NCBI GenBank assembly: GCA_002269645.1
Contig: NIVC01004226.1
Span: 1-54,108 of the forward strand
Direction of reading: 5' to 3'
Source of the DNA: Macrostomum lignano
Lineage: Eukaryota
Length of the DNA stretch: 54,108 nucleotides
The notes below the pieces were generated by a model that did no database searches, was not told the origin of the DNA, and saw nothing but the letters and a program-made list of their open reading frames with translations. Shown here piece by piece: positions 14,380 through 53,029 of the stretch. Numbering within the stretch: position 1 is the first letter of the stretch; each line of letters begins with the position of its first letter. The position numbers were made by a program, and so were the translations under genes.

Positions 14380-14839
14380 ACTATTGGAGCTTCATAAGCC
14401 TGTCCTGCGCAAGAAGTGGCCACAGACCCTGGCACTCGGTCCACTCCTTCTGCACGGCAATGCTAGTTCGCACACAGCACGCACTGTGCAGGACCTACTG
14501 CGGGACTACCAGTGGGAGGTTCTGCTCATCCTCTCACCCTCCTTACATGTACTCTCCAGAGACCTCATACTCATATTCTCTGTGTGATTTCGACCTCTTC
14601 CCAAAGCTCAAGAACCAGCTTTGAGGGCGTCGTTTTTACTGCCTGGACCTGTTCAGCGAGGTCCGCCGCATTGCAAATCTGGCGCTGCTGACGGCATCTA
14701 GAAGTTGCCTGCCAGCTGGGAACTCTCGATTCAAACCAATTAGAGTTATTTTGAGCGATTTTTAGCAGTTCGTTGTTCTGACACTCGTTTGTTGAAAATT
14801 AAATAAGTGTTTGCTGAAACCTTTGGGATGACCATCGTA
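14380..14839 (+). mobile_element. 5'-truncated, decayed mariner remnant (different family from 6294-7586)
   Basis: Fragments LLLHGNASSHTA, WEVL..YSP, CDFDLFPKLKNQL, G..KLP..W; right end GGGATGACCATCG-TA resembles a mariner TIR. Confidence 0.8.
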
Positions 14840-20486: not shown

Positions 20487-20524
20487 GCCAACTCAACAAT
20501 GCAGCCGCTGCAGCTAATGTGTGG

Positions 20525-31500: not shown

Positions 31501-34500
31501 GGACATCTCTCCCAATCACCTGCTGATTCTCATGGACCTCTCCCAATCACCTGCTGATTCTCATGGACATCTCTCCCAATCACCTGCTGATTCTCATGGA
31601 CATCTCTCATACAATCACCTGATTCTCATGGACATCTCTCCAATCACCTGGTGATTCTCATGGACATCTCTCATACAATCACCTGATTCTCGTGGACATC
31701 TCTCCAATCACCTGCTGATTCTCATGGACATCTCTCCCCCAATCACCTGCTGATTCTCATGGACATCTCTCATACAATCACCTGATTCTCGTGGACATCT
31801 CTCCAATCACCTGCTGATTCTCATGGACATCTCTCATACAATCACCTGATTCTCGTGGACATCTCTCCAATCACCTGCTGATTCTCATGGACATCTCTCA
31901 TACAATCACCTGATTCTCGTGGACATCTCTCCAATCACCTGCTGATTCTCATGGACATCTCTCATACAATCACCTGATTCTCATGGACATCTCTCCAATC
32001 ACCTGCTGATTCTCATGGACATCTCTCATACAATCACCTGATTCTCATGGACATCTCTCCAATCACCTGCTGATTCTCATGGACATCTCTCCCCCAATCA
32101 CCTGCTGATTCTCATGGACATCTCTCACAATCACCTGCTGATTCTCATGGACATCTCTCACAATCACATGATGATTCACGTGGACAACTCACTCCCCACT
32201 CCCGTGCAACCTCTCAGGACTCGTTGTGTTCGCCCTGGATATTTACTAAAATTCCTAACTACATTAAACATTAAGAAAGCACAATCTACTAATTTTATGC
32301 AAGTCAACCGAACTGTATATACAACAGTAACGCACTCCCAACAATTTCCCTCATTTTTACAAAACAGGCATCGGTTGGTCGATGATTATCATCACATTTT
32401 GCGGCAGCATCTACTACAACATGCTGATCGCTTGGACGATGTTCTACTTCTGGCAGAGCATCAGCTCAGTGACTGGCGACCTGCCCTGGACCACGTGCAG
32501 CTCCAGCTGGAACACCGGCGACTGCGTGCACATTCGCACCTTGTCGGAGCGAAATCGGTGCAGGCGTCAGGGCGGGTTCTTCGCTTTCGCTCTGAACCAC
32601 AGCTGCCTGCTGCCCAACAACGCCAGCTGGGTGATGGAGTCTTCGGATGGGGCCATGAGGCCGTTTCCTGGAAACGACACGCCCGACGGTACCGCCTTGT
32701 CGACATTCTACGACGAAGCCGCGACGTTGAACTCCACGAATACCAGCCTGCTGCACAACTTTCTGGGCTCCGTGCCCGCGCCCAAGACCTCCAGCGACGA
32801 GTACTTTCAGTGAGTAGCCCGTAAATTCCGCAACAGCTTAGCTGTACATGCCATGACTTCTCAGGGTGGGTTGTCTTTAGACATGCCTGCAAGATTAGAA
32901 ATTCATTGCCGCTGTACACCCTGAGTGAGCGTGTGTATGAGTGCTGTGCCTGCACTCTGACTCAGGAGTCAGCGGAATGTGCAGAATTGCGTCAGCGCAA
33001 CTACAAGCATATTATTATTAACTTAATGCTCTTTGAAACACTGTACCTGGCTATTAACTTTTTAACCGCTATATTCCAGCAACTTCGTCCTGTCTATCTC
33101 AAACGGATTTCACGAGATGGGCTTGCCGAAATGGGAACTGGTCCTCTGCCTGCTGGCCTCTTGGATTGTGGTGATCCTCTGCCTGATTCGGGGAGTTAAA
33201 TCTGCTGGAAAAGTGAGTTTCATTCGATCCCCCTGTACACCTTGTGTGAGCGTGAGAGGCACGAGTGCAGTTGCCTCCTCGCTTTCTACTGGTCGACTAC
33301 CCCACTGCAGTTATTCTCCTACACGTAAATTTGCACTGCACTTTTCTAGTGTGACTAGCAATGCATCATCAACGTAGCAATTAGCAGTCAACACGGCAAA
33401 TGATGTTTTATTGCGCAGTTGGAGTGGCCCATCTAGGGGTAAATAGAATCTGTGGCATGAACTGAGTCTCATGCCAATGACTTTGCACTGATTCAGATGG
33501 TTTTTTGGCCATAGACATTTTTGCAGCGACGGGGCTGTAATTAATAGATAATTAGAAGCTTTTCAAAGGCGAGCATTTTTTCGAGCAGATTCGAGTTTGT
33601 AAAGACTCGAGTTTGTGAAGATTTGAGTTTGTGAAGATTCGAGTTTGTGAAGATTCGAGTTTGTAAAGATTCGAGCTTGTGAAGTTTCAAGTTTGTGAAA
33701 ATTCGAGTTTGTGAAGATTCCAGTTTTTGAAAATTCGAGTTTGTGAAGATTCCAGTTTGTGAAGATTTGAGTTTGTGAAGATTTGAGTTTGATAAAGCCC
33801 CTCGCTGTTGCTCGAACTTATTGTCGAATAATATATCCAGTGGTTATCAAGAAATAAAAGTCGCATATCTTTACAGAAAATTCCCTAGAGGTACCCCACA
33901 GCTACTAGGCTCACTTACACTTTGACCGTTGACCTACTTTGATACAAATCTGCCCGACTTTGATCTGCCTGACCACTCTCTCTCTCTTACAGTTTTTATT
34001 AGCTTCTAGACTTAGGACTAAGAAGAGTATAAAGTTTATTCAAATAACAAGCTAGATGTATCGCCGGTTTATAAAGCTTAGCCGGCTTGATTCACACTAA
34101 AACAGTGTTGCTGGCGTGTGACTAAGTAAAAAAACCCATCAGAAATATACAAAACCTAATAATTAGTTAGCATTAGATTTGTGTAAAGTTAGAGTTCATT
34201 TACCTAAATAGCATACATGTGAATTAACTTTGGCCAGATTTTATACATTTAGAGGTCACGGGAACATACCTGGTATGATAATATTGCACTATCATCATCA
34301 GACTACTGCCCAGCAGTAGACCACACGGAAAATTTGATCTATATTTATTGTGTTTAATAAGAACACAGAAAACATCTATCAAATCTCAACTCTTTAAATG
34401 ATAAAGAAATTTTTTTTACATTGCAGGCTGTGTATTTCACAGGGTTGTTTCCATACCTTGTGCTCACTATTCTGCTGATTCGTGGACTCACTCTGGAAGG

Positions 34501-37500
34501 CAGCTCAAAGGGTTTGGAGTACTTTTTCATTCCCAACTGGGATCGGCTGGCCGACGCGAAGGTCTGGGGCGACGCCGCGATGCAGGTACACTTTGTACTT
34601 TTTCTCTGACAGCCTGAGTCAGCTAAATGAAATCTACAAAAAATAACAACATTTTCCGCAGGTGTTTTTCTCCCTAGCCAGCGGCTGGGGCGGCATCATC
34701 GCTTTGAGCAGCTACAATAAATTCCATAATAACGCTTTGCTGTGAGTTTCTCATATTTTATATATTTTACCTTGATATGAGCATAGCGGCTTACAAAAAC
34801 AGCCAGTATTTTGAAGCAATTTTGCGAATTAAAAATAAATCAATATTCAGTGACTCCCTTCTGGTGTCACTGGGCGACGGCGCCACGTCAATCTATGCCG
34901 GTATGACCGTCTTCTGCGTGCTCGGCTACATGAGTCACGTGATGTCTGTGCCCATCGACGAAGTAGCCAAGGATGGTGAGATGCTCATTCGGTCTTGAAA
35001 GTTTCTATATATCGATGAAGGAACATTTGGCATGATTTCAGGCGCCGGTTTGGCCTTTATTCTCTACCCGGACATTGTGACTTCGATGCCCGTGTCGCCG
35101 CTGTGGGCCGCTCTATTCTTTGGCATGCTGCTCACCCTCGGCTTTGGCACCATGATTGCCAATGTGAACACGCTGGTTACATCCGTGTGCGACAATTGGA
35201 GCCGGCACCTTAGCATCGGCAAACGGCCTTTCATTGTGCTCTGCGCCATCTGCCTGCTGGCCTTTGTCTGTGGCCTGCCCTGCACAACTCGGGTGCGAGA
35301 TGGTTCTGAAGCTTATGTTTTTTAGCTCAGGCTCATTAAATTAGGTTTTGGACACACACTGAATAGACCGCGTGATAAGATAGAGCAGATGAGTAGCAAA
35401 GTTATGGCACCCCAAGTGCTGGCGCCCCAGGTGCTGGCGCCCCAGGTGCTGGCGCCCCAGGTGCTGGCGCCCCAGGTGCTAAATCCTCTGGTGCTAAAGC
35501 CCCTGGTGCTAAAGCCACTGGTGCTAAAGCCCCTGGTGCTAAAGCCCCTGGTGCTAAAGCCCTGGTGCTAAAGCCCCTGGTGCTAAAGCCCCTGATGCTA
35601 AAGCCCCTGGTGCTAAAGCCCCTGGTGCTAAAGCCCCTGGTGCTAAAGCCCCTGGTGCTCAAGCTCCTGGTGCTAAAGCCCCTGGTGCTAAAGCCCCTGG
35701 TGCTAAAGCCCCTGGTGCTAAAGCCCCTGGTGCTCAAGCTCCTGGTGCTAAAGCCCCTGGTGCTAAAGCCCCTGGTGCTAAAGCCCCTGGTGCTAAAGCC
35801 CCTGGTGCTAAAGCCCCTGGTGCTAAAGCCCCTGGTGCTAAAGCCCCTGGTGCTAAAGCCCCTGGTGCTCAAGCTCCTGGTGCTCAAGCTCCTGGTGCTA
35901 TCTATTGTGTTTGACTGCAACCAAAATTCTCAGACAAATATCTATGATAAGACTTAAAGCTTCTCAATATTCCGTTCCATCGAGAATTGAAAATTAGTTT
36001 GAACAGACTATCGAGCACTTGAAGCTAATTATATTATTATTATTCAGGGTGGAATGTTCGTTCTGCAACTGCTGGATAACTACAGCTGCACCTATTCTGT
36101 TCTCGTGGTTGGATTCCTAGAGCTGGTAGTCATCACCTGGGTGTACGGAGCTGACAATTTTCTAGACAACATCGAGGAAATGAACCCTTTTATTCGAAAG
36201 TCCCGAGTCTTCTGGCGAATTGTCTGGCAGTTCTTCTCGCCGTTGGTACTCGTCTCTGTGGCTATTTTCACCTTCACGTCGATTAAGCCGTCAAAGTACG
36301 GCCTGTACGAGTTTCCGCCGAGCGCCGATATTACTGGCTGGGTGATCTCGATGCTTGTTGTCATGCCAATACCTGGAGTTGCTATCTATAAAGTTGTCAC
36401 GTTGAAGGGCAACATGTCGCTGAAGCAGGTAAGAAAGAGTTGTCTAGTTTTGATGTGAATGTATACTAGCCGTTGATGAAGCCGGTGCTCAGGAGTGAGC
36501 GGAATGGGCAGCACTACATTTATCAAATCAGACCGTGATTTGATATTTCGATAAACGTAGTTCTTGACATCAGATTTATCAAATGGGAAATCTTCGAACT
36601 GTCGTTACGTACTGATGATTGGCATGGGCTGTTTTCACAGCAATAAAACCTTTTTTTTAATAATGGGGCTTAGGCCGGCTAATGACCAAAACAGAGGCGT
36701 CGATATGGATCAAAGCCAAGTGGGGGGACAAAGCCAAGAATTCAACATGTACATGTACATGACTAAATTTTGGCACTCATTTTGGCGCCGCAGGCACTCA
36801 TTTTGGCGCTGTAGGCACTCATTTTAGCGCTGTAGGCACTCATTTTGGCGCCGAAGGCACTCATTTTGGCGCCGAAGGCGCTATATTTCGGCGCCCTGAA
36901 GAAACATTATTGATTACCACAACGACTCACAAGATGGGGTGGGGGAACAAAGCATTGGCATGTCCCCCCAGAGATTTTACTGGGGGGGGACATGTCCCCT
37001 CTGTCCCCCCCCCCGGTGGCGACGCGCCCAGACCAAAAAGTGTTCTTTTTAAGCATGCTCAGTCATACTCTTTCTTATTTCCAACAGAAGATACACAGCC
37101 TGATGCTGCCCCACCGCAGCTGGGGCCGCGAGATGGGCAAGAAGGTCCGCCGCCGTTCCAGAGTCGGCAACGAAGACATGAACGGCGACGGACTGCCGTT
37201 CGAGACGTCCCAGGTGAGTAACGTCAAATGGATCAAATTTTAGAGGCTCGTGCGCTTGATAACCAAGAATGACGATGTGCATCCTGTGGGAGTGTGTGCC
37301 TGCGTACGTATCTGTTATGACTGTTGGTGTGTTCGCTGGCTTTGGAACGACTGTCCGTTTGATTTGCGTCCGTGTCAACATGTCAACCAAACCATGCAGG
37401 ATCATAAAAATAGGAATTTTTAATCTAAACTTTTCAGCACACTGTTGTAGAGTGGAACGCTGGCTTGAAACCTTCGACATTGTAGTCAATAGTCAAAGAC

Positions 37501-38030
37501 TTACTCAGGTAGAAGGACGGGAAACTACGCTTCTTGGAAAATTTACGGAGCCAGGTTTTTACCATTTTAGACACAGTAAATGTAAGATTGTACGCAGAAT
37601 CCTAATTTTTCAAACAAAAAGCTTTATGAATATCAATAGAGCCTGTTAAGAAATGCAAAGCATATCAAAAGATAAGCATTGGGTCTCCTTTATATCAGAA
37701 GCAATAACGATTTTTGTGAAACCTCCTATCTCCATAAACCAACCTCCTAAAATGTTCCAAGAAACGTGGTTTCCCGTCCTTGTACTTGAGTAGTCCTTGA
37801 CTATTTTTAGGCACTGTTCTGTTCAAATTGACGACTGACACTCGTAGCAAGCGTCTATATTCTTACGGGACCGGATAAGTGATCTTTTTAAAACAAACCT
37901 GTTGCAGCAACCGCTGACGAACTCTGTGCTCCAGAGTGTCTCCGGCGTCAGCAACAACGGGGCTAACATTGGCGCGTCTACCGATTCGCGTTTCTTGCGA
38001 ATCCTTCGAGGCGGTGGCGTCAATGTTTAG
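28538..38030 (+). CDS. SLC6 Na+-coupled amino-acid transporter, GlyT/PROT/ATB0,+-like (paralog A), ~722 aa, 12 exons
   Basis: Exons 28538-28585, 29041-29199, 29484-29625, 32368-32809, 33080-33212, 34427-34585, 34662-34741, 34851-34975, 35042-35292, 36048-36428, 37088-37213 and 37908-38030 (last exon less certain) join in one open frame. Motifs [61 protein letters not shown]. Gly rather than Asp in TM1 excludes a monoamine transporter. Confidence 0.95.
31398..32170. repeat. ~29-bp minisatellite (CAATCACCTGCTGATTCTCATGGACATCTCTC) in SLC6-A intron 3
   Basis: About 26 units with alternating variants. Confidence 0.95.
33583..33790. repeat. 16-bp minisatellite (GAGTTTGTGAAGATTC) in SLC6-A intron 5
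   Basis: About 13 units. Confidence 0.9.
35409..35899. repeat. 15-bp minisatellite (CCCTGGTGCTAAAGC) in SLC6-A intron 9
   Basis: About 32 units. Confidence 0.95.
36692..37030. mobile_element. hAT-like MITE with 8-bp TSD and an internal 21-bp tandem repeat, in SLC6-A intron 10
   Basis: GACCAAAA at 36684-36691 and 37031-37038; imperfect termini CAGAGGCGTCG / CGACGCGCCCA; internal CACTCATTTTGGCGCCGAAGG repeats; subterminal G and C runs. Confidence 0.72.
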
Positions 38031-39507: not shown

Positions 39508-42500
39508 ATGAGTTTCCGTGACAAACCTACTGCTCCAATCAATGATGAATTGGAGGTAATATTTTAAGCAAATTTGTTTTTTTAATGTACGAAGCACTTT
39601 TGAATTGATGTTTCAGTTGCCAAAAGATTAATGTAAGTAATTATTTTAGCCTGCTTTAATTTGATATTCCTCAAGGCGCCTTAGAAGTTTTGCTTTGGGT
39701 ACTTTTGGAGATATTTTTGGTTTATAATTTTTTAGTTAAATAATCTAAATAATATAACACTTTTCAGGTTAAAAATTTGTAGTTCTTACTTAAAAAGTCA
39801 GAAATTTCTTTATAATATGTTCAAGCTTTTATTTTCTGTAAATAGAAGACATATTTATTTATTTTATTATTGCTTCATGCATTTAGGTAAAGCCACAAAA
39901 CATGCAAAATACAACAAAAAACTATGGTGCAAATTAATAATCGAAAATATGATTAGGATATAGCTTATAGTTTCACAAAAAGGATAGTACTGGCTAAGTA
40001 CTGGCTATAAATTGTAATATAATTTTTGCACAAAAAATGAAGTTCTGCGTTAAAGACACTTTTTTAGCGATCAGTTGAAACGAATCACCGTTTGATTGCG
40101 ATAAAAGTGATATTCCATGTAAATATTAAAAGCAATTTATAGATAATGCCTTACTTATTGAAATTAACTGACTAACAGATGCAGCAGCAAGACACGCAGC
40201 AACCAGATCTGCTGGCCGACACTGCTGAGCGAAAGCGTGACTCCTGGGGCGGTAAAGCAGAATTCCTGTTCTCCTGCATCTCCTATGCCGTGGGACTGGG
40301 AAATGTTTGGCGATTTCCATACCTGTGCTACAAGGTGAGGCATATATTAATTATTGGTCTGCAGAGTATAAGTGAATGAGGACTAATTATTCCTGGATAA
40401 TTGGATAATTGATGTATATGTAGCTCGTAGATAACTGAGTAGGGGTTCAAGTACACCTGGATAATTGGCGTTACCGCGTAGATAACAGAGTAAGGGTTCA
40501 GTTACATTACACCTGGATAATTGGTGTAGATAACAGAGTGAGGGTTCAGCTACACCTGGATAATTGGTGTAGATAACAGAGTAGGGGTTCAGCTACACCT
40601 GGATAATTGGTGTTACCGTGAATAACAGAGTAGGGGTTCAGCTACACAGGAAATTTCCAGGAATTACCTGTATATTTCGATGTTAAAAGTTTCTTTGTCG
40701 AATTGTCTACTTTCTCTGAAAAAAACTTGTACCGTTAAAAAGTTCAGAAGTCCTCGAACTAGGTACGCGCGTCCTAATTAGCATGAATGTCGAATACAGA
40801 GAGCCTCTAAAAGCAATTTCGTGTAGTACATCTGATCTAAGTGGAAAAGATGAGAGTAGTCTAATGCAGAAGAAATAATTGTAAAAATGTTGCCCAAATC
40901 TTTATGGCAGAATGGCGGCGGCGCGTTCCTTCTACCGTTCCTCATCATGCTGCTCACCGTGGGCATTCCATTGCTCTACATGGAGACCTGCTTTGGACAG
41001 TACTCAGCTACAGGACCAATCACCGTGTGGAAGGCTAGCCCTCTGTTTACAGGTGAGAATAAACTTAAAAAGTCAACAAAATATGATACCAACATGCATT
41101 TTATGCTATAGTGGGTTCTGGGGAAAACACAGTGGCTCTCTTGGTGGGCGCCACTGCCTCTTGGGTGGGTGTCCCTATCTCTTAGGTTGGTGTCCCTGTC
41201 TCTTAGGTTGGTGTCCCTGTCTCTTAGGTTGGTGTCCCTGTCTCTTAGGTTGGTGTCCCTGTCTCTTAGGTTGGTGTCCCTGTCTCTTAGGTTGGTGTCC
41301 CTGTCTCTTAGGTTGGTGTCCCTGTCTCTTAGGTTGGTGTCCCTGTCTCTTAGGTTGTTGTCCCTGTCTCTTAGGTTGGTGTCCCTGTCTCTTAAGTGGG
41401 TGTCCCTGTCTCTTAGGTGGGTGTCCCTGTCTCTTAAGTGGGTGTCCCTGTCTCTTGGTGGGTGTCCCTGTCTTCTGGGTGTCCCTGTCTCTTGGGTGGG
41501 TGTACCTGTCTCTTAGGTGGGTGTCCCTGTCTCTTAGGTGGGTGTCCCTGTCTCTTAGGTGAGTGTCCCTGTCTCTTAGGTTGGTGTCCCTGTCTCTTAG
41601 GTGGGTGTCCCTGTCTCTTAGGTTGGTGTCCCTGTCTCTTAAGTGGGTGTCCCTGTCTCTTAGGTTGGTGTCCCTGTCTCTTAGGTTGGTGTCCCTGTCT
41701 CTTAAGTGGGTGTCCCTGTCTCTTAGGTGGGTGTCCCTGTCTCTTAAGTGGGTGTCCCTGTCTCTTGGTGGGTGTCCCTGACTTCTGGGTGTCCCTGTCT
41801 CTTGGGTGGGTGTCCCTGTCTCTTAGGTGGGTGTCCCTGTCTCTTAGGTGGGTGTCCCTGTCTCTTAGGTGAGTGTCCCTGTCTCTTAAGTGGGTGTCCC
41901 TGTCTCTTAGGTTGGTGTCCCTGTCTCTTAGGTTGGTGTCCCTGTCTCTTAAGTGGGTGTCCCTGTCTCTTAGGTGGGTGTCCCTGTCTCTTAAGTGGGT
42001 GTCCCTGTCTCTTGGTGGGTGTCCCTGTCTTCTGGGTGTCCCTGTCTCTTAGGTGGGTGTCCCTGTCTCTTAGGTGGGTGTCCCTGTCTCTTAGGTGGGT
42101 GTCCCTGTCTCTTAGGTGAGTGTCCCTGTCTCTTAGGTTGGTGTCCCTGTCTCTTAGGTTGGTGTCCCTGTCTCTTAGGTTGGTGTCCCTGTTTCTTAAG
42201 TGGGTGTCCCTGTCTCTTAGGTGGGTGTCCCTGTCTCTTAGGTTGGTGTCCCTGTCTCTTAGGTTGGTGTCCCTGTCTCTTAGGTTGGTGTCCCTGTCTC
42301 TTAAGTGGGTGTCCCTGTCTCTTAGGTGGGTGTCCCTGTCTCTTAGGTTGGTGTCTCTGTCTCTTAAGTGGGTGTCCCTGTCTCTTAGGTGGGTGTCCCT
42401 GTCTCTTAAGTGGGTGTCCCTGTTTCTTGGTGGGTGTCCCTGTCCTCTGGGTGTCCCTGTCTCTTGGGTGGGTGTCCCTGTCTCTTAGGTGGGTGTCCCT

Positions 42501-45500
42501 GTCTCTTAGGTGGGTGTCCCTGTCTCTTAGGTGGGTGTCCCTGTCTCTTAGGTGGGTGTCCCTGTCTCTTGGTGGGTGTCCCTGTCTTCTGGGTGTCCCT
42601 GTCTCTTGGGTGGGTGTCCCTGTCTTCTGCGTGTCCCTGTCTCTTGGGTGGGTGTCCCTGTCTTCTGGGTGTCCTTGTCTCTTAGGTTGGTTCCCTGTCT
42701 CTTAGGTGGATGTCCCTGTCTCTTAAATGGGTCTTAGGTGGGTGTCCCTGTCTCTTAGGTGGGTGTCCCTGTCTCTTAGGTGGGTGTCCCTGTCTCTTAG
42801 GTGGGTGTCCCTGTCTCTTGGTGGGTGTGTCCCTGTCTTTTAGTTTGGCACCGCTATCTCTTAGGTCGGCCGCACTCAAAAAAGCAAAACCAACTCTGGC
42901 GAACTCAAGAGTCACGTGCTCTCCTCTCAATATAGTTGTTTTGAATCAAGTTGAGTTGGAATTATCTGCCGAGTTCAACAATAAACAGCAAGATGCACAC
43001 CCAGAGGTACAGCTTCTGTATGCATAGCTAATGTGCCTAAGTGTTTTTAGTTTTGGGGGTGTGTCTCTTGAACGCGAGAGCCAAAAATGAAGCATTTATT
43101 GTTAAGCTTGAATTCTTTAACTCTGCTGGGTTTTCTATTACCCGCTCAAATATGTTTGAGCAGGTATGTGATAGCAGTTTTTTACGCCAACCCTAGTACG
43201 AGGTTACTCACCTCCATGACTCATCCTACTTGATATCAAGCCGGACTCAGGCTCCAACTCTTTTTTTGTTCTTTTACTTGCGGCCAAAACAAAATTATTG
43301 CTGTTCCTCCTTTGCGTTTGCGTGAATTTAGCGCTAGCTCGTAGCAAAGGTCAACTTCGTCAAACAGATGCATCTCTTTAGTGATTTTCAAATTTTGTGA
43401 TTTTGTGATTTTAATTTTGTGATTCTCAAAAGATAGACTTTTGCATTAAAATATTCATGACCGATAGTATCAATATTTTCTCACAGATTCTCGTGGACAT
43501 CTCTCCAATCACCTGCTGATTCTCATGGACATCTCTCATACAATCACCTGATTCTCGTGGACATCTCTCCAATCACCTGCTGATTCTCATGGACATCTCT
43601 CATACAATCACCTGATTCTCATGGACATCTCTCCAATCACCTGCTGATTCTCATGGACATCTCTCATACAATCACCTGATTCTCATGGACATCTCTCCAA
43701 TCACCTGCTGATTCTCATGGACATCTCACTCCCCACTCCCGTACAACATCTCTCAGGAGTCATTGTGATCGCCCTGGATATTTAATAAAGTTCCTAACTA
43801 CATTAAACATTAAGAAAGCACAATCTACTAATTTTATGTAATTCAACCGAACTGTATATACAACAGTAACGCACTCCCAACAATTTCCCTCATTTTTACA
43901 TAACAGGCATCGGTTGGTCGATGATTATCATCACATTTTGCGGCAGCATCTACTACAACATGCTGATCGCTTGGACGATGTTCTACTTCTGGCAGAGCAT
44001 CAGCTCAGTGACTGGCGACCTGCCCTGGACCACCTGCAGCTCCAGCTGGAACACCGGCGACTGCGTGCACATTCGCACCTTGTCGGAGCGAAATCGGTGC
44101 AGGCGTCAGGGCGGGTTCTTCGCCTTCGCTCTGAACCATAGCTGCCTGCTGCCCAACAACGCCAGCTGGGTGATGGAGTCTTCGGATGGGGCCATGAGGC
44201 CGTTTCCTGGAAACGACACGCCCGACGGTCCCGCTTTGTCGACGTTCTACGACGAAGCCACGACATTGAACTCCACGAATACCAGCCTGCTGCATAACTT
44301 TCTGGGCTCGGTGCCCGCGCCCAAGACCTCCAGCGACGAGTACTTTCAGTGAGTATCCTGCAAATGCCGCAACAGCTCAGCTGTACACGCGTCTGATTCT
44401 CGTGCCATGACACATCGGGGCGGTTGTCTTTGCTGCAAAATGCATTAACGCAATGCATGAAGATCTAGGACTAGTTTTTTAGTTTTATTTGCACAAAATC
44501 ATCCACAGTTCTCAACGTCTATCGAAACTTCCAAATTGCTTGATTAAGCAAAAATTGTGCTTTGTGCAAGGTCGATTAAAGAAGCAGCTGTTTCAGAAAT
44601 TCTGTCGATGAAGCTTGGCAAGCAAGTCGGCATTTTGATGATATGATGAATCATATGATGAATTCTAAAGTTCAGAAAAGTGATAAATGTGTCAGTTGAG
44701 TGCTGATAAGACCGTTAACAGGGCCTGAGGATTCTCATTAACTGCACGAACTCCATCTATATTAAAACTCTTATTTCAGCAATTTTGTTCTGTCCATATC
44801 GAACGGTTTCCACAATATGGGGCTACCGAAATGGGAGTTGGTGGTCTGTCTGCTGCTAGCGTGGATTGTGGTTGTCATATGCCTGATTCGCGGCATTAAA
44901 TCGGCTGGTAAGGTGAGTATTGCATTGCTTATTAATCTGCTAAGGGGTGGCATCACAAACATATATATATTTTGGGTGATATTTCGGTGATATTTCGGGT
45001 TTGTTATATTTCAGGTTTGGGATATTTGGGGTTTATGATATTTGGGGTTTGTTATATTTCGGGTTTGGGATATTTAGGGTTTGGGATATTTGGGGTTTGT
45101 GATATTTCGGGTTTGGGATATTTCGGGTATGTTATGTTTCGGGTTTGGGATATTTCGGGTTTGTGATGTTTCGGGTTTGTGCTTTTTCGGGTTTGTGATT
45201 TTTCGGGTTTGTGATGTTTCGGGTTTGTGATTTTTCGGGTTTGTGATTTTTCGGGTTTGTGATTTTTCAGGTTTGTTATATTTCGGGTTTGTTGTATTTC
45301 GGGTTTGGGATAGTTCGGGTTTGTGATATTTCGGGTTTGTGATGTTTCGGGTTTGGGAAATTTCGGGTTTATGATGTTTCGGGTTTGGGAAATTTCGGGT
45401 TTGGGAAATTTCGGGTTTGTGAAATTTCGGGTTTGGGAAATTTCGGGTTTGGGAAATTTCGGGTTTGTGATATTTCGGGTTTGTTATATTTCGGGTTTGG

Positions 45501-47087
45501 GATATTTCGGGTTTGTGATATTTCGGTTTGTGATACATGTACATGTATTTCGGATCTGTGATGGCGACCCTCTGCAAATAAGAGTTACATGTAGCCAACA
45601 ATGATTGATAGATTGTGTTGGCATGGCCGAAGTTTAACAAACGTTACTGTTCCAGTGATTGACCTAATAGTAGACATGAGTAGTTGTTAACCATTGACAA
45701 AACGATAAACTGTATGTAAAGCATTCGTTAAGCATTTTTTGCTACTATTTGTGATAAACTACTAGCAAAAACATTATTCTACCATACTATAGTATCCAAG
45801 CGCTGAATGGAACAGTCTGATTCACTCACGGTAAGCTCATTAGGTCTTCACATGTTTCAACAGATATCTAAATGAAACTGGTGGTGATTTTAGAGAATAT
45901 ATATCTAAACATACTTTTTTATAATCAGCTTTATTCTAACGATAAATTACTTTTAATGTTTGTCAGATTCTACTGAATGATTATCAGATTCTACTGAATG
46001 ATTATCAAATTATACTAAATGATTATTTCATTTACATGTAACTGCCTCATTACTAACTCATCATTAATTATTAATCCAGGGGGTTGCAGCTTAGTGGTTT
46101 GAGCGTCGGTCTCACGACTTGAAGGTCGGGGGTTCGATTCCCGATCCCACTGGAACAATTTGTGTCCTTGAGCAAGACACTTAACTCTGCATTGCTTCAG
46201 TTCACCCAGCTGTAAAATGGGTGCCAGCATTAGCTGGGGTAATTGAGGGTGTGTGGCTACCCCCCAGTCCTTGGACTGAACAGCCGTACGCAGCCTTCAG
46301 ATGCGCCGCGCAATAGCTGCGGCTGAGCTGTTGGTTGCACATCTGCCCATTTGGGGCAGGTGTAATCAATTATTATTTTTTAATTCATCAAATTCATTGA
46401 TCAATAATTAAACTTTACAAGCATTTTAAAAACCCATGGAATAACTTAATTTGTACCTTTGTAATTTACTTAAAACAATTCAGTCAGATAAATATCGAAA
46501 ACTATTCGAAATTCCTTCCACGTCAAAAGTGAGGTACTTGTGCTCTAGCCAAGTTTATTGGCCCAGCATTGCAATCCCACGCAAAGCCCAGCACGGTTCG
46601 CGCAAGCCGAATATAGAATTCTCTTGTACAGAATAGAAATCAAAACGCAAGTAAACCGAGTGCCAACAAACACTGCGTGTCTATTGTGAGAACTGGGGCT
46701 TGAACTCGAGATTATACAAGCAACGCATGGGTTTCATCATTTTGGGTAGCTTTAGGCTATATGCAGAGAATACAGTAGAGTACGGAATATAGAGACGGAA
46801 AGAAGCAAAGAACGGTAGTAGTGCGCGGCTCGTACCAGAATGAATGAGAGAAAGTCGTAAAAGCGCTTCGGATTGCACGCATGACTAAAAGCCGTCCAAC
46901 CTGAAAATGTAAAACGAGCGCGCAGAAAATTAATTTACCTGCAGCTGCTAGCAAGAGTTGCAGGAAAAACAGGGGGCGAATAAAGCACTCTGGATTTGTC
47001 AGAAGAGCTCCATTGAATGCGCTTAGCATTGAATTCAACTCTAATAGAAGCTCTAAGGCGGTGATGCAGCAAAGACAGCAGCAGCAT

Positions 47088-47130
<43 letters not shown>

Positions 47131-50100
47131 TAAAGCTGCAGGCAAAACCAGACATTGGGACCGACAGCGGCGAGGAGCTCTCGGACACCGAAGGATTCGT
47201 CTCGGACATTTGTCAGTACTGCAACTCGTCAGAGCTCAGTGATTTATTACTCATTGTTCGACGTTCAGAAGAGGACGATCTGAGCTCGGAAGAAGCTGAA
47301 GATTGCAACGAAAATGGCGGACAATTTGCACAGCTCCGGCAACGAGAATTTCACGCTCACAAATTCGTCCTAGCGAAGTCGTCCGAGTTCTTCCGGACGA
47401 TTCTGTACAGCGCGAACTGGCCGGCCCCGTCCGTGTCCGCTTCGTCCAACTTCGCCGCTGAAAGAAGCCTGTGCGAGCTGGTCGAAGATGATGCCTGTTT
47501 TCAGTGCTTTGAGCATTTCTTGCGCTTCCTGTACGCTGGTCGAGTTTTTATTAACAGGGCTACGGCGATTGGTGAGTGTGATATGCAATAAAGTCGTTGC
47601 TTTCCCTACTTCCGTTCAGTACCTGAAGTCTTTCAGGTACCCCAAACCCCAGAAACTCCGACGTACACGAACTCAATTAACTGCATCTGTTGTGTTATGA
47701 AGTTCCGCTCAACAGAAGCAAATTTGTTGGCTAGTGCATGGCTTATATATAGGCCTCCTGAAGTAGCGTTTCAGTCTATTCAGTCAGGTTCTCTGACCAC
47801 AGTTCCCCAATTTTTAACTTTTCTACACATCATTCCTCTGAATGTTAAAAAGTGAACATCAGTGCATTGGCCTTATATGCATGTACTTTCTTTGTTTTTA
47901 AGCTTCCTACATTTTTATATCTCTAAACTATTTTACTTTATTCACAACTCTGCGCATACACCTTAACTTACCAATCTAATTAATGCCTTCCGACTAACTT
48001 AACAACCTACCAGCATAACATTACAGTGCGATCTAACAACCTACTAACAGATACAAACCAAAGTCTATTATCAATCTTTCAGCCTACCTCCCTAACCTAC
48101 TAAACTGCCTACCCATGCTTACATACATGTACTTACAACGCATCCGTAAACTATAGAAAATCTTTCCTTCCACCAACACAGGCCTACTACGCCTAGCCGA
48201 CAAGTACCAGGTGTGGTCGTTGAGACAACAGACGGAGCAATTCATGACGGAAAATGCCCAGCCACCAAACATACGCAACGCCGTTTTATGGTATCCCTGG
48301 CGAAACACCTGCAGCTGGATAAACTGGCAGCCACCTGCTTTAACACCGTCTGCTGGAATGCTAAACAGGCTGTCGAGCTGGACGAGTTTCTCGAGGTTGG
48401 TCCCGATTTCGTCCGGGACCTGTTGCACACAGGCAAGCTGGTGATAGAAGACGAATACGCTGTACTGCGACAGCTGCTACTGCCATGGCTGGGCGTTGGC
48501 GACAGATTTCAACGATACGTCGTAGAGATGCTGCCAATGATTCGATTCCCGATGATGTCGGCTAAACAACTCTGGGAGCTGGAGTCATCGAGGTGAAGAC
48601 TCGGTTTTAACTCTGCAACTGAAAGTTCGTCTTAGGAACTTAGCTTCATCAACAAGCAAACCATAAAAGCCATAAAATCAATACTACGAGGTGTTTTGAA
48701 AGGGTTATAAGAGAATAAGATTGAGCTCTTACGTCAACTCAAGCCTATCGATTTTTCATTTGCAATACCTCTTGGGCTGACTGAGACATAGAGACGTCAG
48801 ACTAATTTTCATATTTTACGGTCGGTACCAGAACTAAGTATTTTTTATTAGAGGCAGGGGCTGTGTGCACACGTACCCTGGCGCACTTTAAGCGACATTG
48901 TCGCACAACCGACGAGAAGCATTGCTGCCCATTCCGCCGACTCCTCTGAGGAGGATACGTAGGCAGTCATGCGCACAGGCACATACATAGAAGTGTACAG
49001 CGGCCCTAACTTTATTTATCGTTAGGCATGTACACTTCACTGTGCCTTGGGGTTGGCCCTCATGGATGTGAATTGCACGAACAGAGCCAAGCCGAGATTC
49101 CAATTTAGCCCCAAATTGATGTCACTGCACTTGGAATCGAGCGCCGCGCTGGACCACTGAGATAGAAAAGTTTTTTCAAAGACCAAATTTAATTTTTACA
49201 GCCTCAGTCAGACGGAAGAGTCCAACAAGCTCCTAGGCGACTTGATCGCCAAAGCCTATCGCTACAGAGCACTGTGCCCCTGGCAACACGAGCTCAAACA
49301 GGCCGAATTTTCTAGTAAATTCTATCGACCGAGAAGCTACATGTGCCTGGCTGTGGACAATATCAAAGTTGGCAACACAATGCGCTTCGGTTTACAGGTA
49401 ATTAATTGATCAATAAAATTAAACTGGGACACAAGATGAGAGTGTTGTATCACTTAAGCAGCAGGGTAGTCGTGTTCTTCTTGGATTAACTAGGGTACAT
49501 ATACTAGCACTCTCCTTAAGGTCGGGGTTTCGATTCCCGATCCCACTGGAACAATTTGTGTCCTTGAGCAAGACACTTAACTCTGCATTGCTTCAGTTCA
49601 CCCAGCTGTAAAATGGGTGCCAGCATTAGCTGGGGGTAATTGAGGGTGTGTGTGGCGACTGAACAGCCGTATGCAGCCTTCAGGTGCGTCGCGTAATAGC
49701 AGCGGCTGAGCTGTCGATGGCAAATCTGGCCTAACTGGCCTATTAAATTATTAATGCCCTAACAGAAAAACAATATGAATTATAGTTTCAGCTTTTATTT
49801 ACTCCACCTTGCCTTACTGGCTTCAGCTACCCTGCAGTGTGTTTCCATATTTGCTTAAGCTTTTCATCGGTAGCTATTCTATTTTTATCGTTCTTTTCAA
49901 GTAATAGTGACCTCGCGAGAAGGTCCACTTGGCTGTGGATCACGTGATATTTCTCTAATTAAGTTTCTTTTCCTAGTGTCCACATGCGCCTATAGATACC
50001 TAGTTGATACTTCAATACTCCGCTGGTAGCTACTTGAAGTAATGTTTAGTTGACTTGGTTGACCATAGTTGAAAAAATTAAGTGTCTTTAGTCTTTATGA

Positions 50101-53029
50101 GTTCACTGATGGGAACTCGCTTCTTTGTACTAACATAAAAGATTTAGACTCCGTTCTTAGGTCATAATATTATATCGGATTCTTAGTTTCTTAATTCTAT
50201 GAAAAGGCATAAAAATGGACCAAAGTTCTACTTCTACAAGATCATCTTCAACTGCCATTTCTTAGGTAATGGCGTCCAACTTCCAGATCTTTGTTTCGAG
50301 GTCAAAAATTCTATGATGAGGTTTTTAGATACCGTTTTTGGGTCAAAGTTTCTTCGACAAGACTGGACAAGACGTCTAGTTTCCGTTTCTGGAGTCGAAG
50401 GGTCAAAGTTATTCGACTAGACATCGAGTTTCCGTTTCTGGGATTAAAACCTCTACGACTAGACATCGAGTTTCCGTTTCTGGGATTAAAACCTCTACGA
50501 CTAGACATCGAGTTTCCGTTTCTGGGATCAAAGCTTCTACGACTAGACATCGAGTTTCCGTTTCTGAGATCAAAGCCTCTACGATTAGACATCGATTTCC
50601 GTTTCTGGGATCAAAGCCTCTACGACTAGACATCGATTTTCCCTTTCTAAAGATCAGAGGCTCTACGGCATAACATGCAACATACGTTTCTGAGATGAAG
50701 GCTCTACAAAGTGGTTTGTTTTAATAACAACTGTACTGCCAGTATTTTTATAAGCGTTGCTAAATTTACTTCCTTCTGCTCTAGGTTGAGATCCGCACCC
50801 AATCCGGTCCAGTCCCGAGCCCCATCCGGGATGCGACTGGAAAATGGGCTATCAGAAGTCGTGCGACAACTGGACTTTCAAGTTGGTGTCGCAGGAGTCC
50901 AGCTTCCCAGCCGGCACTGGAGTGACAGTAGACTTGGTGGCCCTGTGCGAGAACGATTCCGGCGATATCGTGAACTATTTCCGAGAGAAGAACTTTCAGT
51001 TTTGCCGCAGCTCACAGTTTCACCAGTGCCAGTTCGACATTGGCAAGGGGCCCGGCAGACGGGATGCAAAGACTTTGCACATCCTATTGAGGATCACCTC
51101 TCCTAAGGTTCCGCCTGCTACGTAGACGCTGCAACTTGAATTGAGTTTGAAAACAGAAATAACTGTGTCAACTGGTCTTGCCATTCGACAATATTAGACA
51201 ATTGTCGGCCGAAGTTCCCCAGTGTCTGTAGACGTCGATGACACATTATTTGCTTTTGCATTACATCGACGGATAACGACGTAATACTTTGTTTAGTTAG
51301 GTTGCTTGGCCAATACTATTACATCATGTACATTGGATCGTGTCTAGTTCCAATGTTCTCCTGTCAACCCTGTTATTTCAACAGTCAATGTCACTAAAAA
51401 TGTTCTGTGGATGATGAATTGATCTGTGATTTTTTATCTCGATCAAATTTATTACACAGGCGTGTTTTTTTGCATCTATCCTATTGATAATCCGTGCCTT
51501 ATATAATTATCAATGTAGCGACTTCGAAAGATGGTGAACTATGAATATTATAGTGTAATAAATACAAAACCTTTATTACTGGATCCTTACTGTTTTACAG
51601 ATTTTAAACTCAAATCAAATCCTCAAATCCTCAAAAGAATGCACCGACTTGAGCAGGTCAGAGGAACTTTGAATAAATTTTCGTCTCTCTTTGCGTGGTA
51701 CTTAATATTTTGTTTTTAAAAGTTTACGACTGTTTAATATTTTAATAGAACATTTAATATCGTATAGTCTCCAATTTTGCATCAATTTTTCATCACCTGC
51801 AGGCCGTGTACTTCACGGGTATATTCCCGTACCTAGTGCTCACGGTTCTGCTAATTCGTGGACTCACTCTGGAAGGCAGCTCCGACGGTTTGACTTATTT
51901 TTTCATACCAAAATGGCAGAGACTGGCCGACGCAAACGTTTGGGGCGACGCGGCGATGCAGGTGAATTTTGTTGACAGGCTAAATTTGTTCGGCTACGCA
52001 TTGCTAAAGAGTCGTAGAGGCTTGAGCAGAGAAGCTTGAAGACGCGGAGAGTCACTGAATCCCTCACCAAAGTACCTGACAGGAGTTCCCTTCCGCAGAC
52101 TGCAGCTACAGTACTTTTGGGGCTCGAGCACGGATCTTTAGTTAGCGATCGCTTGTCCTGCAATTCATGCTCATGAGGGTCAACCCGTAAAATCACAGAG
52201 CCTGACTATGAGGAAGTCAGGTTTGCTGTACACCTTGTGTGAGCGTGTGCCAGTACGTATCCGTGGTATCCTTCTGAACGGAAAGAACCTAGCCGATTTG
52301 AACCTGAACTTCTTAATTGTTACTTCTACGTAAAAATGCGACGCCTATAGGTCCTAATCTACATCAGGATATTAGACCTAAAATTATGCTTTTCATTAAC
52401 AATCTGCGCAGGTATTTTTCTCCCTATCAAGCGGTTGGGGTGGAATCATCACGCTGAGCAGTTATAACAAATTTCGGAACAACGCCTTGCTGTGAGAACT
52501 ATAATTAGCAAATTTCTTTTATCTAATTGAAGTTCGATTCAAATTTCTGTTTCGAATATAAACAAATTTTAACAAATCATTTTATAGAGACTCTCTCATT
52601 GTTTCTTTTGGCGACGGCGCCACGTCAATCTATGCCGGCATGACCGTCTTCTGCGTGCTTGGCTACATGAGTCACGTGATGTCTGTGCCCATCGACGAAG
52701 TAGCCAAGGATGGTGAGGTGTTCATTCGGTCTTGAAAGTATCTATATATCGATAAAGGAACATTTGTCATGATTTCAGGCGCTGGTTTGGCCTTTATTCT
52801 CTACCCGGACATTGTGACTTCGCTGCCCGTGTCGCCTCTGTGGGCCGCTCTATTCTTTGGCATGCTGCTCACCCTCGGCTTTGGCACCATGATTGCCAAT
52901 GTGAACACGCTGGTTACATCCGTGTGCGACAATTGGTACGCTCAACTAGGCACAGGGCGTCGGCCATTGATTGTACTTTGTGCCATCTGCCTGCTGGCTT
53001 TCGTCTGCGGTCTGCCCTGCACCACTCAG
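39508..53029 (+). CDS. SLC6 GlyT-like transporter (paralog B), exons 1-9; 3' end outside window
   Basis: Exons 39508-39555, 40179-40334, 40911-41052, 43907-44348, 44780-44912, 51803-51961, 52412-52491, 52588-52712, 52779-53029. Same phases and, except exon 2 (156 vs 159 nt), the same lengths as paralog A; open frame throughout. Confidence 0.93.
40390..40648. repeat. ~40-bp tandem repeat (TACACCTGGATAATTGGTGTAGATAACAGAGTAGGGGTTCAGC) in SLC6-B intron 2
   Basis: About 6 imperfect units. Confidence 0.85.
41135..42835. repeat. 21-bp minisatellite (GTGTCCCTGTCTCTTAGGTKG) in SLC6-B intron 3
   Basis: About 80 units with recurring variant blocks; source of all the CPCLLG/VSLSLR ORFs. Confidence 0.96.
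43486..43727. repeat. Shorter copy of the ~29-bp minisatellite of SLC6-A intron 3
   Basis: Same unit variants in the homologous intron position. Confidence 0.93.
44973..45531. repeat. 16-bp minisatellite (GGGTTTGTGATATTTC) in SLC6-B intron 5
   Basis: About 35 units starting 60 nt after the donor. Confidence 0.93.
46079..46375 (+). mobile_element. tRNA-derived CORE-type (MIR-like) SINE, near full length
   Basis: tRNA-like head with A box (TAGTGG) and B box (GGTTCGATTCC), then TGTGTCCTTGAGCAAGACACTTAAC..CTGTAAAATGGG resembling the MIR/CORE domain, and an ATT-rich tail. Confidence 0.75.
47064..51125 (+). CDS. BTB-BACK protein, BTBD17-like, nested in SLC6-B intron 5; two apparent -1 frameshifts
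   Basis: Exons 47064-47571 (polyQ; BTB: [26 protein letters not shown]), 48182-48592 ([10 protein letters not shown]; BACK: [22 protein letters not shown]), 49202-49397 (KAYRYR..FYRPRSY) and 50785-51125. Splice phases are consistent if one G is restored at ~48299 and one at ~50847. Confidence 0.85.
49518..49755 (+). mobile_element. 5'-truncated second copy of the CORE-type SINE
   Basis: Near-identical to 46123-46320 from AAGGTCGGGG..TTCGATTCCCGATCCC onward. Confidence 0.8.
50378..50645. repeat. 42-bp tandem repeat (ACTAGACATCGAGTTTCCGTTTCTGGGATCAAAGCCTCTACG) in BTB gene intron 3
   Basis: About 6 units. Confidence 0.9.

What the first reader, a model, noticed from the sequence alone, without database searches (positions are those of the whole stretch)
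44913..51802. Complete multi-exon BTB-BACK gene nested on the same strand inside an SLC6 intron
Seen: SLC6-B exon 5 (ends GK|, phase 0) and exon 6 (AVYFTG, phase 0) are separated by 6.9 kb that holds a four-exon BTBD17-like gene in the same orientation. The equivalent intron of paralog A is 1.2 kb and has no such gene. Known: most nested genes are antisense, because same-strand nesting forces the host spliceosome to skip strong internal splice sites and a polyA site. Inference: either the gene was inserted after the duplication while keeping its introns (DNA-level transposition, not retroposition), or expression is mutually exclusive, or SLC6-B is split and functionally dead. A weak phase-0 acceptor (TCTAAG|GCG) just before ATG 47064 could also allow an SLC6(TM1-4)-BTB chimera.
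Basis: partly seen in the sequence, partly recalled or inferred. Interest (0 to 1): 0.72.

Follow-up and report, generated by a model that had tools for sequence, protein, structure and literature searches.

The report
Frameshifted BTB gene inside transporter intron
In what is almost certainly the flatworm Macrostomum lignano, a four-exon BTBD17-like gene lies in the same orientation inside a 6.9-kb intron of an intact glycine-transporter-like SLC6 gene; as assembled the nested copy is broken by two single-base deletions, and such host/nested gene pairs are a common, well-described arrangement.

Summary
The arrangement is real at the stated coordinates. SLC6-B has a coding exon ending GK| at 44912 and the next one starting AVYFTG at 51803, 6,890 bp apart. 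A BTB+BACK gene with four coding exons lies between them on the same strand. The matching intron of paralogue A is 1,214 bp and holds no such gene.

The nested gene is not "complete" as assembled. Two 1-nt deletions (about 48301 and about 50834) break the frame, and the first stop falls at codon 257. This is either a young, intron-bearing pseudogene in a neopolyploid genome or two leftover assembly indels. I favour the pseudogene at about 60:40.

The host is not dead. SLC6-B has an intact 1,488-nt ORF in the window with canonical splice sites. dN/dS against paralogue A is 0.04 on the 5' side of the intron and 0.13 on the 3' side. B has no excess of derived residues.

The Owenia and Lottia orthologues have a single-exon CDS and are not nested in an SLC6 gene. 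The nesting and the three introns are therefore lineage-specific, and the copy is not a retrocopy.

Same-strand nesting is only slightly rarer than antisense nesting in mammals. This is an ordinary new example of a known kind and of low interest. No transcript data could be consulted.

The parts
44780..44912 (+). SLC6-B coding exon 4 (TM4; ends ...IRGIKSAGK, phase 0, donor AAG|gtgagt)
   Evidence: contiguous alignment of the A paralogue to GlyT2 across this junction
44913..51802 (+). SLC6-B intron 4 (6,890 bp), the host intron
   Evidence: no SLC6-like exon inside
44987..45535 (.). 16-bp satellite (34 copies) starting 75 bp after the exon-4 donor
46080..46360 (+). tRNA-derived SINE-like element (tRNA-like head 46080-46149)
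   Evidence: Rfam tRNA 30.5 bits, just above the gathering score; second copy found
47064..47571 (+). BTBD17-like coding exon 1 (ATG, CAG18 poly-Q, BTB domain; donor TTG|gtgagt, phase 1)
47572..48181 (+). BTB intron 1 (610 bp, gtgagt...acacag)
48182..48592 (+). BTBD17-like coding exon 2 (end of BTB, BACK domain). One base is missing just after TGG 48298-48300, so the frame shifts and a stop falls at codon 257
   Evidence: tblastn switches from frame 1 to frame 3 at 48300 with contiguous residue numbers, e.g. P0016 146/147
48593..49201 (+). BTB intron 2 (609 bp, gtgaag...ttttacag)
49202..49397 (+). BTBD17-like coding exon 3 (ends CAG|gtaatt, phase 0)
49398..50784 (+). BTB intron 3 (1,387 bp). 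Holds a 5'-truncated SINE copy at 49518-49731 and a 42-bp minisatellite at 50414-50667
50785..51125 (+). BTBD17-like coding exon 4 (C-terminal domain, stop TAG 51123-51125). A second missing base lies at 50833-50835 (..PIRDA / DWKMGY..)
51557..51677 (+). Two AATAAA signals (51557 and 51672) downstream of the BTB stop, 131-246 bp before the host acceptor
   Evidence: motif only
51803..51961 (+). SLC6-B coding exon 5 (TM5; acceptor cctgcag|, AVYFTG..., phase 0)
33213..34426 (+). Equivalent intron 4 of paralogue SLC6-A (1,214 bp, no BTB-like sequence)

Best explanation
This is a genuine same-strand host/nested gene pair in a Macrostomum lignano-type genome.

The host, SLC6-B, is a GlyT/ProT-like Na+/Cl- amino-acid transporter and one of two tandem paralogues. 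It is intact and under purifying selection. Its intron 4 has grown to 6.9 kb by accumulating a satellite, tRNA-derived SINEs, a minisatellite and a whole BTBD17-like transcription unit. That unit has four coding exons, three GT-AG introns and AATAAA signals before the host acceptor.

The host spliceosome is inferred to remove the whole unit as one intron.

The nested copy as assembled is disabled by two independent 1-nt deletions, which predict a 256-aa protein that keeps the BTB domain but lacks the BACK and C-terminal domains. It is most likely a very recently inactivated, unprocessed copy. M. lignano carries three near-identical subgenomes, so redundant copies are expendable. Everything else about the copy (conserved residues, splice sites, codon bias) still looks like a working gene.

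Shown: the anatomy, the frameshifts, the integrity of the host and the constraint on it. Inferred: that the frameshifts are biological, that the host splices exon 4 to exon 5, and that the BTB unit had its own promoter.
For: - Arrangement and coordinates.
- Organism: UniRef M. lignano SLC6 fragments match window pieces at 96-100% amino-acid identity.
- Host integrity: SLC6-B e1-e8 form a 1,488-nt open frame and SLC6-A e1-e9 a 1,872-nt open frame, with GT-AG at every intron. A versus B dN/dS is 0.04 for e1-2+e4 and 0.13 for e5-8. Polarised changes are 6 A-derived against 2 B-derived. The closest solved structures are GlyT2, GlyT1 and ProT, aligned without a break across ...SAGK|AVYF....
- Frameshifts: every homologue changes frame at 48300 with contiguous residue numbers. 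The C-terminal domain is split between frames at about 50834.
- Frameshift distribution: 2 in 1,456 nt of BTB CDS against 0 in 3,360 nt of SLC6 CDS.
- Recent inactivation: 73 of 89 columns invariant in 15 homologues are kept. There is no in-frame stop other than those caused by the shifts. GC3 is 0.65 against 0.69-0.70 in the SLC6 genes.
- Not a retrocopy and not carried by a transposon: three introns, and no terminal inverted repeats.
- Not ancestral: the Owenia and Lottia orthologues are not inside an SLC6 gene.
- Genome context: three subgenomes 1.4-2.4% apart (PMC10733133).
Against: - No reads or transcripts were available, so neither the frameshifts nor any splice junction is verified.
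- Both deletions can be read as contractions of short G runs (TGG[G]CG and GAT G[G]C GAC). That is also what leftover long-read consensus errors look like. If the window comes from Mlig_3_7, that assembly was built with Canu from PacBio reads and polished with Pilon in a genome whose three near-identical copies cause multi-mapping.
- The excess of frameshifts in BTB over SLC6 exons is not significant. If two events fall uniformly on 4,816 nt, the chance that both land in BTB is (1456/4816)^2 = 0.09.
- The copy shows no other sign of decay.
Confidence: 0.55

Rival explanations
1. The nested BTBD17-like gene is intact and functional. The two frameshifts are leftover assembly indels. The locus is an ordinary active host/nested pair in which both genes are expressed, perhaps in different cells.
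For: - 82% of homologue-invariant columns are kept.
- The correct frame stays open for 93 codons after the second shift and ends where homologues end.
- The splice sites are canonical and codon bias is normal.
- Both deletions lie in G runs.
- The older UniRef model P0062 disagrees in frame with this window inside SLC6-A, which shows that indel noise exists between M. lignano assemblies.
- The assembly was built from PacBio CLR reads in a three-subgenome genome.
Against: - Two errors in 1.46 kb would be an error rate of about 1.4e-3 per base, while 3.36 kb of neighbouring SLC6 CDS has none.
- No protein above 44% identity to this gene exists among 1.84 billion representatives or in the 5.8-billion set, so no Macrostomum annotation or transcript-derived ORF of it is on record. 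This point is weak, because SLC6-B is also absent apart from fragments.
Confidence: 0.35
2. SLC6-B is the casualty. The BTB-bearing insertion split it into two non-functional halves, or exons 1-4 and exons 5-8 belong to different partial duplicates.
For: - Synonymous divergence from A differs between the halves (pS 0.62 against 0.37). This could mean different histories.
- The internal splice sites and AATAAA signals on the same strand could truncate host transcripts.
Against: - Both halves have open frames, matching phases and canonical sites.
- dN/dS is 0.04 and 0.13, and B is not faster than A.
- The uneven dS is explained by patchy gene conversion. Exon 3 and its flanks are 92-99.6% identical.
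- The exon order is collinear with A.
Confidence: 0.06
3. The adjacency is an assembly artefact, for example a chimeric join inside the 16-bp satellite at 44987-45535, and the BTB gene is not really inside SLC6-B.
For: - A 550-bp satellite lies 75 bp after the exon-4 donor.
- 36% of Mlig_3_7 by length is reported to lie in scaffolds that are chimeric between subgenomes.
Against: - Even with a false join in the satellite, the BTB gene would still end 678 bp upstream of SLC6 exon 5 on the same strand. It would still lie upstream of exons that need a 5' half.
- Subgenome chimeras join homologous loci, so gene order would usually be kept.
- The region contains no N runs.
Confidence: 0.07
4. The nested gene is expressed from the host's pre-mRNA. 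Either a spliced leader is trans-spliced onto an acceptor upstream of ATG 47064, making an operon-like unit inside an intron, or cis-splicing produces SLC6(TM1-4)-BTB chimeras.
For: [quoted passage not shown] The reported acceptor motif is [T/C]TNCAG (PMC8629364).
- Two such motifs lie 100-125 nt upstream of the ATG, at 46939 and 46958.
- TCTAAG|GCGGTGATG is in frame both with SLC6 exon 4 (phase 0) and with the ATG that ends the SL sequence.
Against: - About 1.2 such motifs are expected by chance in the 664 nt scanned (my estimate from base composition).
- The two CAG acceptors are out of frame for a chimera.
- TAAG is not the preferred acceptor.
- The frameshifted ORF would make any product a target for nonsense-mediated decay.
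- There are no expression data.
Confidence: 0.07

Closest known systems
Host/nested gene pairs (a gene lying wholly within an intron of another gene), as catalogued in Drosophila, human and mouse
   Same: A complete transcription unit lies inside a single, unusually long intron of a larger gene. It has the same orientation as the host, which is nearly as frequent as the opposite orientation in mammals (PMC11694760).
   Different: The organism uses SL trans-splicing and operons and is a neopolyploid. The nested copy carries two frameshifts. There is no expression evidence for either partner.
BTBD17 / LGALS3BP-type BTB-BACK proteins ('BTB/POZ domain-containing protein 17-like' of molluscs, annelids and brachiopods)
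   Same: BTB and BACK domains plus the conserved C-terminal domain. Identity is 35-42% over nearly the full length, with E down to 4e-78.
   Different: It has an N-terminal poly-Q tract and a 26-residue acidic insert in the BTB domain. It has three introns where the Owenia and Lottia orthologues have one coding exon. The reading frame is broken twice.
Unprocessed (duplicated) pseudogenes
   Same: It keeps the introns and splice sites of a working gene and has disabling frameshifts with a premature stop.
   Different: No parent copy could be identified with these tools. The decay is minimal (two indels, no nonsense codons), so an assembly artefact is not excluded.
SLC6 (SNF) transporters of the GlyT1/GlyT2/ProT group
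   Same: The host and its paralogue align end to end with GlyT2 (E 5.6e-155) and contain Pfam SNF.
   Different: They have a very long, Cys- and Asn-rich extracellular loop 2. They are tandemly duplicated with gene conversion. The substrate is unknown.

Membership tests
Host/nested gene pair (intronic, same strand) | The nested gene lies entirely between two consecutive exons of the host, with no shared exon | tested here: met
   The BTB CDS at 47064-51125 and the AATAAA signals at 51557 and 51672 all lie inside 44913-51802
Host/nested gene pair (intronic, same strand) | The exons on both sides belong to one host gene | tested here: inconclusive
   Collinear with paralogue A, phases match, the ORF is continuous and both halves are constrained. 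No transcript evidence for the 44912/51803 junction is available.
Host/nested gene pair (intronic, same strand) | The nested gene is an independent, expressed transcription unit | not testable with these tools
   No RNA data. Only splice-site and poly(A) motifs were seen.
BTBD17-like BTB-BACK family | BTB domain followed by a BACK domain and the family's C-terminal domain | tested here: met
   Pfam BTB 59 bits and BACK 44 bits. The alignment to 15 homologues has 73 shared invariant columns, including the C-terminal WK.Y.K...W motif.
BTBD17-like BTB-BACK family | An uninterrupted reading frame that encodes the full protein | tested here: not met
   The spliced CDS is 1,456 nt with two 1-nt deletions and a stop at codon 257
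Processed pseudogene / retrocopy | No introns, a poly(A) tail remnant and target-site duplications | tested here: not met
   Three GT-AG introns of 610, 609 and 1,387 bp
Unprocessed pseudogene | Disabling mutations in a copy that keeps its gene structure | tested here: inconclusive
   The frameshifts are present in the assembly, but they cannot be checked against reads. The excess over neighbouring CDS has P of about 0.09.
Transposon-captured gene (Pack-MULE or Helitron-like) | Terminal repeats or transposon ends flanking the captured gene | tested here: not met
   The only inverted repeat is one 16-nt chance-level pair. No other repeat flanks the gene, apart from two same-orientation SINE copies, one of them inside BTB intron 3.
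SLC6 / SNF transporter (host) | SNF domain with TM1-TM12 collinear with solved SLC6 structures | tested here: met
   Pfam SNF 1.5e-96 for SLC6-B e1-e5. GlyT2 5.6e-155 for SLC6-A. B is cut after TM9 by the end of the window.

The most novel reading that the evidence does not exclude
In this SL-trans-splicing flatworm, the same-strand nested gene is (or was) released from the host SLC6-B pre-mRNA by spliced-leader trans-splicing at an acceptor just upstream of ATG 47064. This would be an operon-like unit embedded in an intron, so host and guest would share one promoter and would not interfere with each other.
Probability: 0.06. Interest if true: 0.55.

Novelty: new member of a known kind. Interest (0 to 1): 0.2.

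Why it matters
It matters little beyond annotation. The locus is one more host/nested pair, in a genome where such pairs have not been catalogued.

It is useful as a caution: the nested BTBD17-like model should be annotated as frameshifted or a pseudogene until reads are checked, and SLC6-B should be annotated as one intact gene spanning it.

If the nested gene proved to be active and SL trans-spliced out of the host transcript, it would show how trans-splicing can resolve same-strand nesting. Nothing here points to that.

Tried and rejected
- Independent copies of the locus. Exact look-ups of the exon-1 ORF and the exon-4 ORF in public assemblies found nothing, so the frameshifts could not be cross-checked.
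- A closer relative or a Macrostomum orthologue of the BTB protein. None above 44% identity exists in 1.84 billion representatives. The named top clusters are Lingula and Octopus.
- Look-ups of the Pecten and Mizuhopecten orthologues were not on record.
- Homology between A intron 4 and B intron 4, to find the insertion boundaries. None was found.
- A transposon carrier. No terminal inverted repeats. Introns 1 and 2 are almost the same length (610 and 609 bp) but share no sequence, so they are not introner-like.
- A mini-intron that could bypass the exon-2 frameshift. Rejected because the alignment to homologues has no gap there.
- The M. lignano SL sequence itself is not in the window.
- ARAGORN finds no tRNA gene. 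Only Rfam scores the SINE head as tRNA-like.
- The third protein search was not spent. SLC6-A and SLC6-B, which look functional, are also missing from the database apart from fragments, so the absence of a BTB protein there says little.
Full report
**Observation.**
- The window has two tandem, same-strand SLC6 paralogues.
- I rebuilt both from homology and splice signals.
  - SLC6-A coding exons: 29041-29199, 29484-29625, 32368-32809, 33080-33212, 34427-34585, 34662-34741, 34851-34975, 35042-35292 and 36048-36428. More C-terminal exons lie downstream.
  - SLC6-B coding exons: 40179-40334, 40911-41052, 43907-44348, 44780-44912, 51803-51961, 52412-52491, 52588-52712 and 52779-53029. The rest lies beyond the window end.
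- The exon ending ...KSAGK|gtgagt at 44912 and the exon starting cag|AVYFTG at 51803 are both phase 0 and 6,890 bp apart. The same intron in A (33213-34426) is 1,214 bp.
- tblastn with 19 BTBD17-like proteins hits the window only between 47142 and 51092, on the + strand. SLC6 proteins hit nothing inside the intron.
- Counting from the ATG exon, the flanking exons are numbers 4 and 5.

**Organism.**
- Two UniRef proteins named Macrostomum lignano (P0062, P0112) match pieces of the window at 96-100% amino-acid identity. All other SLC6 hits are at or below 56%.
- The window is therefore from M. lignano or a very close relative.
- This matters for four reasons:
  - The mean intron length is 1.1-1.4 kb (PMC5730564).
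  - The reference assembly is Canu/PacBio polished with Pilon.
  - The genome holds three subgenomes only 1.4-2.4% apart, and 36% of the assembly by length lies in chimeric scaffolds (PMC10733133).

**The nested gene.**
- The best model has four coding exons:
  - 47064-47571 (ATG; donor TTG|gtgagt)
  - 48182-48592 (acacag|; donor GAG|gtgaag)
  - 49202-49397 (ttttacag|; donor CAG|gtaatt)
  - 50785-51125 (ctctag|; stop TAG)
- The introns are 610, 609 and 1,387 bp.
- Homologue residues run on without loss across each intron. The splice motifs fit the M. lignano consensus GT[G/A]AG...CAG.
- The exons have 54% GC against 41% in the introns. GC3 is 0.65, like the SLC6 genes at 0.69-0.70.
- The conceptual protein has Pfam BTB and BACK domains. 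It is 35-42% identical to BTBD17-like proteins of molluscs, annelids and Lingula.
- AATAAA occurs at 51557 and 51672, after the stop and before the host acceptor.

**The frameshifts.**
- The gene is not complete as assembled. The spliced CDS is 1,456 nt.
- In exon 2 every homologue aligns in frame 1 up to 48300 and in frame 3 from 48300 on, with consecutive residue numbers (for example P0016 146/147). The text reads ..NAVLWYPW then [?]KHLQLDKL.., where homologues have WY.W[A/S/G]K.L.L. One base is missing from the codon after TGG 48298-48300.
- In exon 4..[10 protein letters not shown] is in one frame and [10 protein letters not shown].. is in the next, where homologues read ..GPVP...RD[G/A][E/D]WK.TYRK. 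One base is missing at 50833-50835.
- Read as assembled, the frame stops at codon 257. This leaves the BTB domain and no BACK or C-terminal domain.
- Bridging both sites with an unknown base gives a 485-aa protein that ends where homologues end.

**Are the frameshifts real?**
- For a real pseudogene:
  - There are two events in 1,456 nt against none in 3,360 nt of SLC6 CDS. The large exons of a potassium-channel gene elsewhere in the window also show no obvious break.
  - A genome with three redundant copies is a place where one copy can die.
  - No Macrostomum protein for this gene exists in either protein library.
- For assembly error:
  - Both sites can be read as contractions of short G runs.
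  - The protein keeps 73 of 89 columns that are invariant in 15 homologues, similar to the most divergent true homologues.
  - There are no nonsense codons.
  - The correct frame stays open for 93 codons after the second shift.
  - The clustering is not significant, P = (1456/4816)^2 = 0.09.
- I put the real, young pseudogene at about 0.6 and the artefact at about 0.4. Read mapping would settle it.

**The host is not dead.**
- SLC6-B's eight exons in the window give an uninterrupted 496-codon frame with GT-AG at every intron.
- Nei-Gojobori comparison with A gives the following:

| Exons compared | dN/dS | dS |
|---|---|---|
| e1-2 plus e4 (5' of the intron) | 0.04 | about 1.3 |
| e5-8 (3' of the intron) | 0.13 | 0.51 |
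| e3 | 0.07 | 0.09 |

- Exon 3 and about 1 kb around it are 92-99.6% identical between A and B, against 77-84% elsewhere. This indicates recent gene conversion. Patchy conversion explains the uneven dS better than a composite origin does.
- With ten outgroup SLC6 proteins, the polarisable differences are 6 A-derived and 2 B-derived, spread evenly over both halves. B is not relaxed.
- SLC6-A aligns to GlyT2 (5.6e-155), GlyT1 and ProT without a break across ...SAGK|AVYF....

**Origin.**
- The Owenia fusiformis and Lottia gigantea orthologues each encode residues 19-439 and 31-456 on one exon. Their neighbours are RING/B-box, BLTP1 and PAN genes in Owenia and FRG1 and PCM1 genes in Lottia. No SLC6 gene spans or flanks either of them.
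- The nesting and the three CDS introns are therefore specific to the flatworm lineage.
- The copy came, or stayed, as genomic DNA and is not a retrocopy.
- The time and boundaries of any insertion cannot be recovered, for three reasons:
  - The A and B introns share no detectable similarity.
  - No terminal repeats flank the gene.
  - The only repeated element is a tRNA-derived SINE, at 46080-46360 with a truncated copy at 49518-49731 inside BTB intron 3.
- 'Inserted after the A/B duplication' is the simplest reading but is not shown.

**Mechanism and rivals.**
- The best reading is an ordinary host/nested pair. The host removes a long, repeat-rich intron that happens to hold a BTBD17-like unit, and that unit is probably recently disabled.
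- The rivals are:
  - The nested gene is intact and the frameshifts are errors (0.35).
  - The host is split or dead (0.06).
  - The adjacency is a false join in the 16-bp satellite at 44987-45535 (0.07). Even then the BTB gene would still end 678 bp upstream of SLC6 exon 5.
  - Expression comes from the host transcript, by SL trans-splicing or as a chimera (0.07).
- On the last rival:
  - Two [T/C]TNCAG motifs lie at 46939 and 46958, about what chance gives.
  - Both are out of frame for a chimera.
  - TCTAAG|GCGGTGATG is in frame but weak.
  - That acceptor may simply be the BTB gene's own acceptor for a small upstream exon, as seen in Owenia and Lottia.

**Comparison and novelty.**
[quoted passage not shown] Orientation shows only a slight bias to antisense (PMC11694760). 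Same-strand nesting is therefore not an anomaly that needs a special explanation.
- This is a new example of a known kind.
- Interest is low (0.2).

Noticed in passing
window 31387-32851 and 43486-44390: A gene-conversion tract between SLC6-A and SLC6-B. Exon 3 plus its upstream tandem repeats and downstream intron are 92-99.6% identical, with exon 3 dS 0.09. The other exons are 77-84% identical, with dS 0.5-1.3.
   Followed up: partly
window 29035-29043 and 40173-40181: Both SLC6 start codons directly follow a splice acceptor (caacag|ATG and taacag|ATG). The published M. lignano spliced leader ends in ATG, so SL trans-splicing here would place a second in-frame ATG. A 5'-UTR exon is the alternative.
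   Followed up: partly
window 47572-48181, 48593-49201, 49398-50784; L001 27637-28899; L002 10797-12074: The BTBD17-like CDS has three introns (phases 1, 2, 0) in this flatworm, but the same region is a single exon in Owenia and Lottia. These are lineage-specific intron gains, or parallel losses in the other two species.
   Followed up: partly
window 46080-46360 and 49518-49731: Two same-orientation copies (87.7% identical) of a tRNA-derived SINE-like element. The first has a tRNA-like head that just passes Rfam's tRNA threshold. ARAGORN calls no tRNA.
   Followed up: partly
window 17580-20492, minus strand: Exons of a small-conductance Ca-activated (SK-type) potassium channel. It was recognised only from the pore motif TVGYGD and the region after S6 ([10 protein letters not shown]...), read from my own knowledge of the family. 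The large exons show no obvious frame break.
   Followed up: no
window 6362-7500 (+) and 14351-14690 (+): Decayed mariner/Tc1-like transposase remnants spread over several frames, for example ...FDWFAEF......GDESWI......HGNASSH.... They were identified by eye only.
   Followed up: no
window 29150-29200, 35044-35293, 37121-38024 versus protein P0062: The UniRef M. lignano model A0A1I8FDY8 (P0062) reads SLC6-A exon 1 and the end of exon 8 in other frames than the intact frame of this window, and it skips exons 4-6. Either the older assembly or model has indel or mis-splicing errors, or it comes from another subgenome copy.
   Followed up: partly
window 41100-43000, 31387-32190, 12800-13480, 175-1218, 1425-2810: Very long tandem arrays with strong strand skew (AT skew -0.6 at 41-43 kb) fill SLC6 intron 2 and other parts of the window.
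   Followed up: no
window 47066-47141: A (CAG)18 microsatellite encodes an N-terminal poly-Q tract in the BTBD17-like protein. Homologues have no such tract.
   Followed up: no
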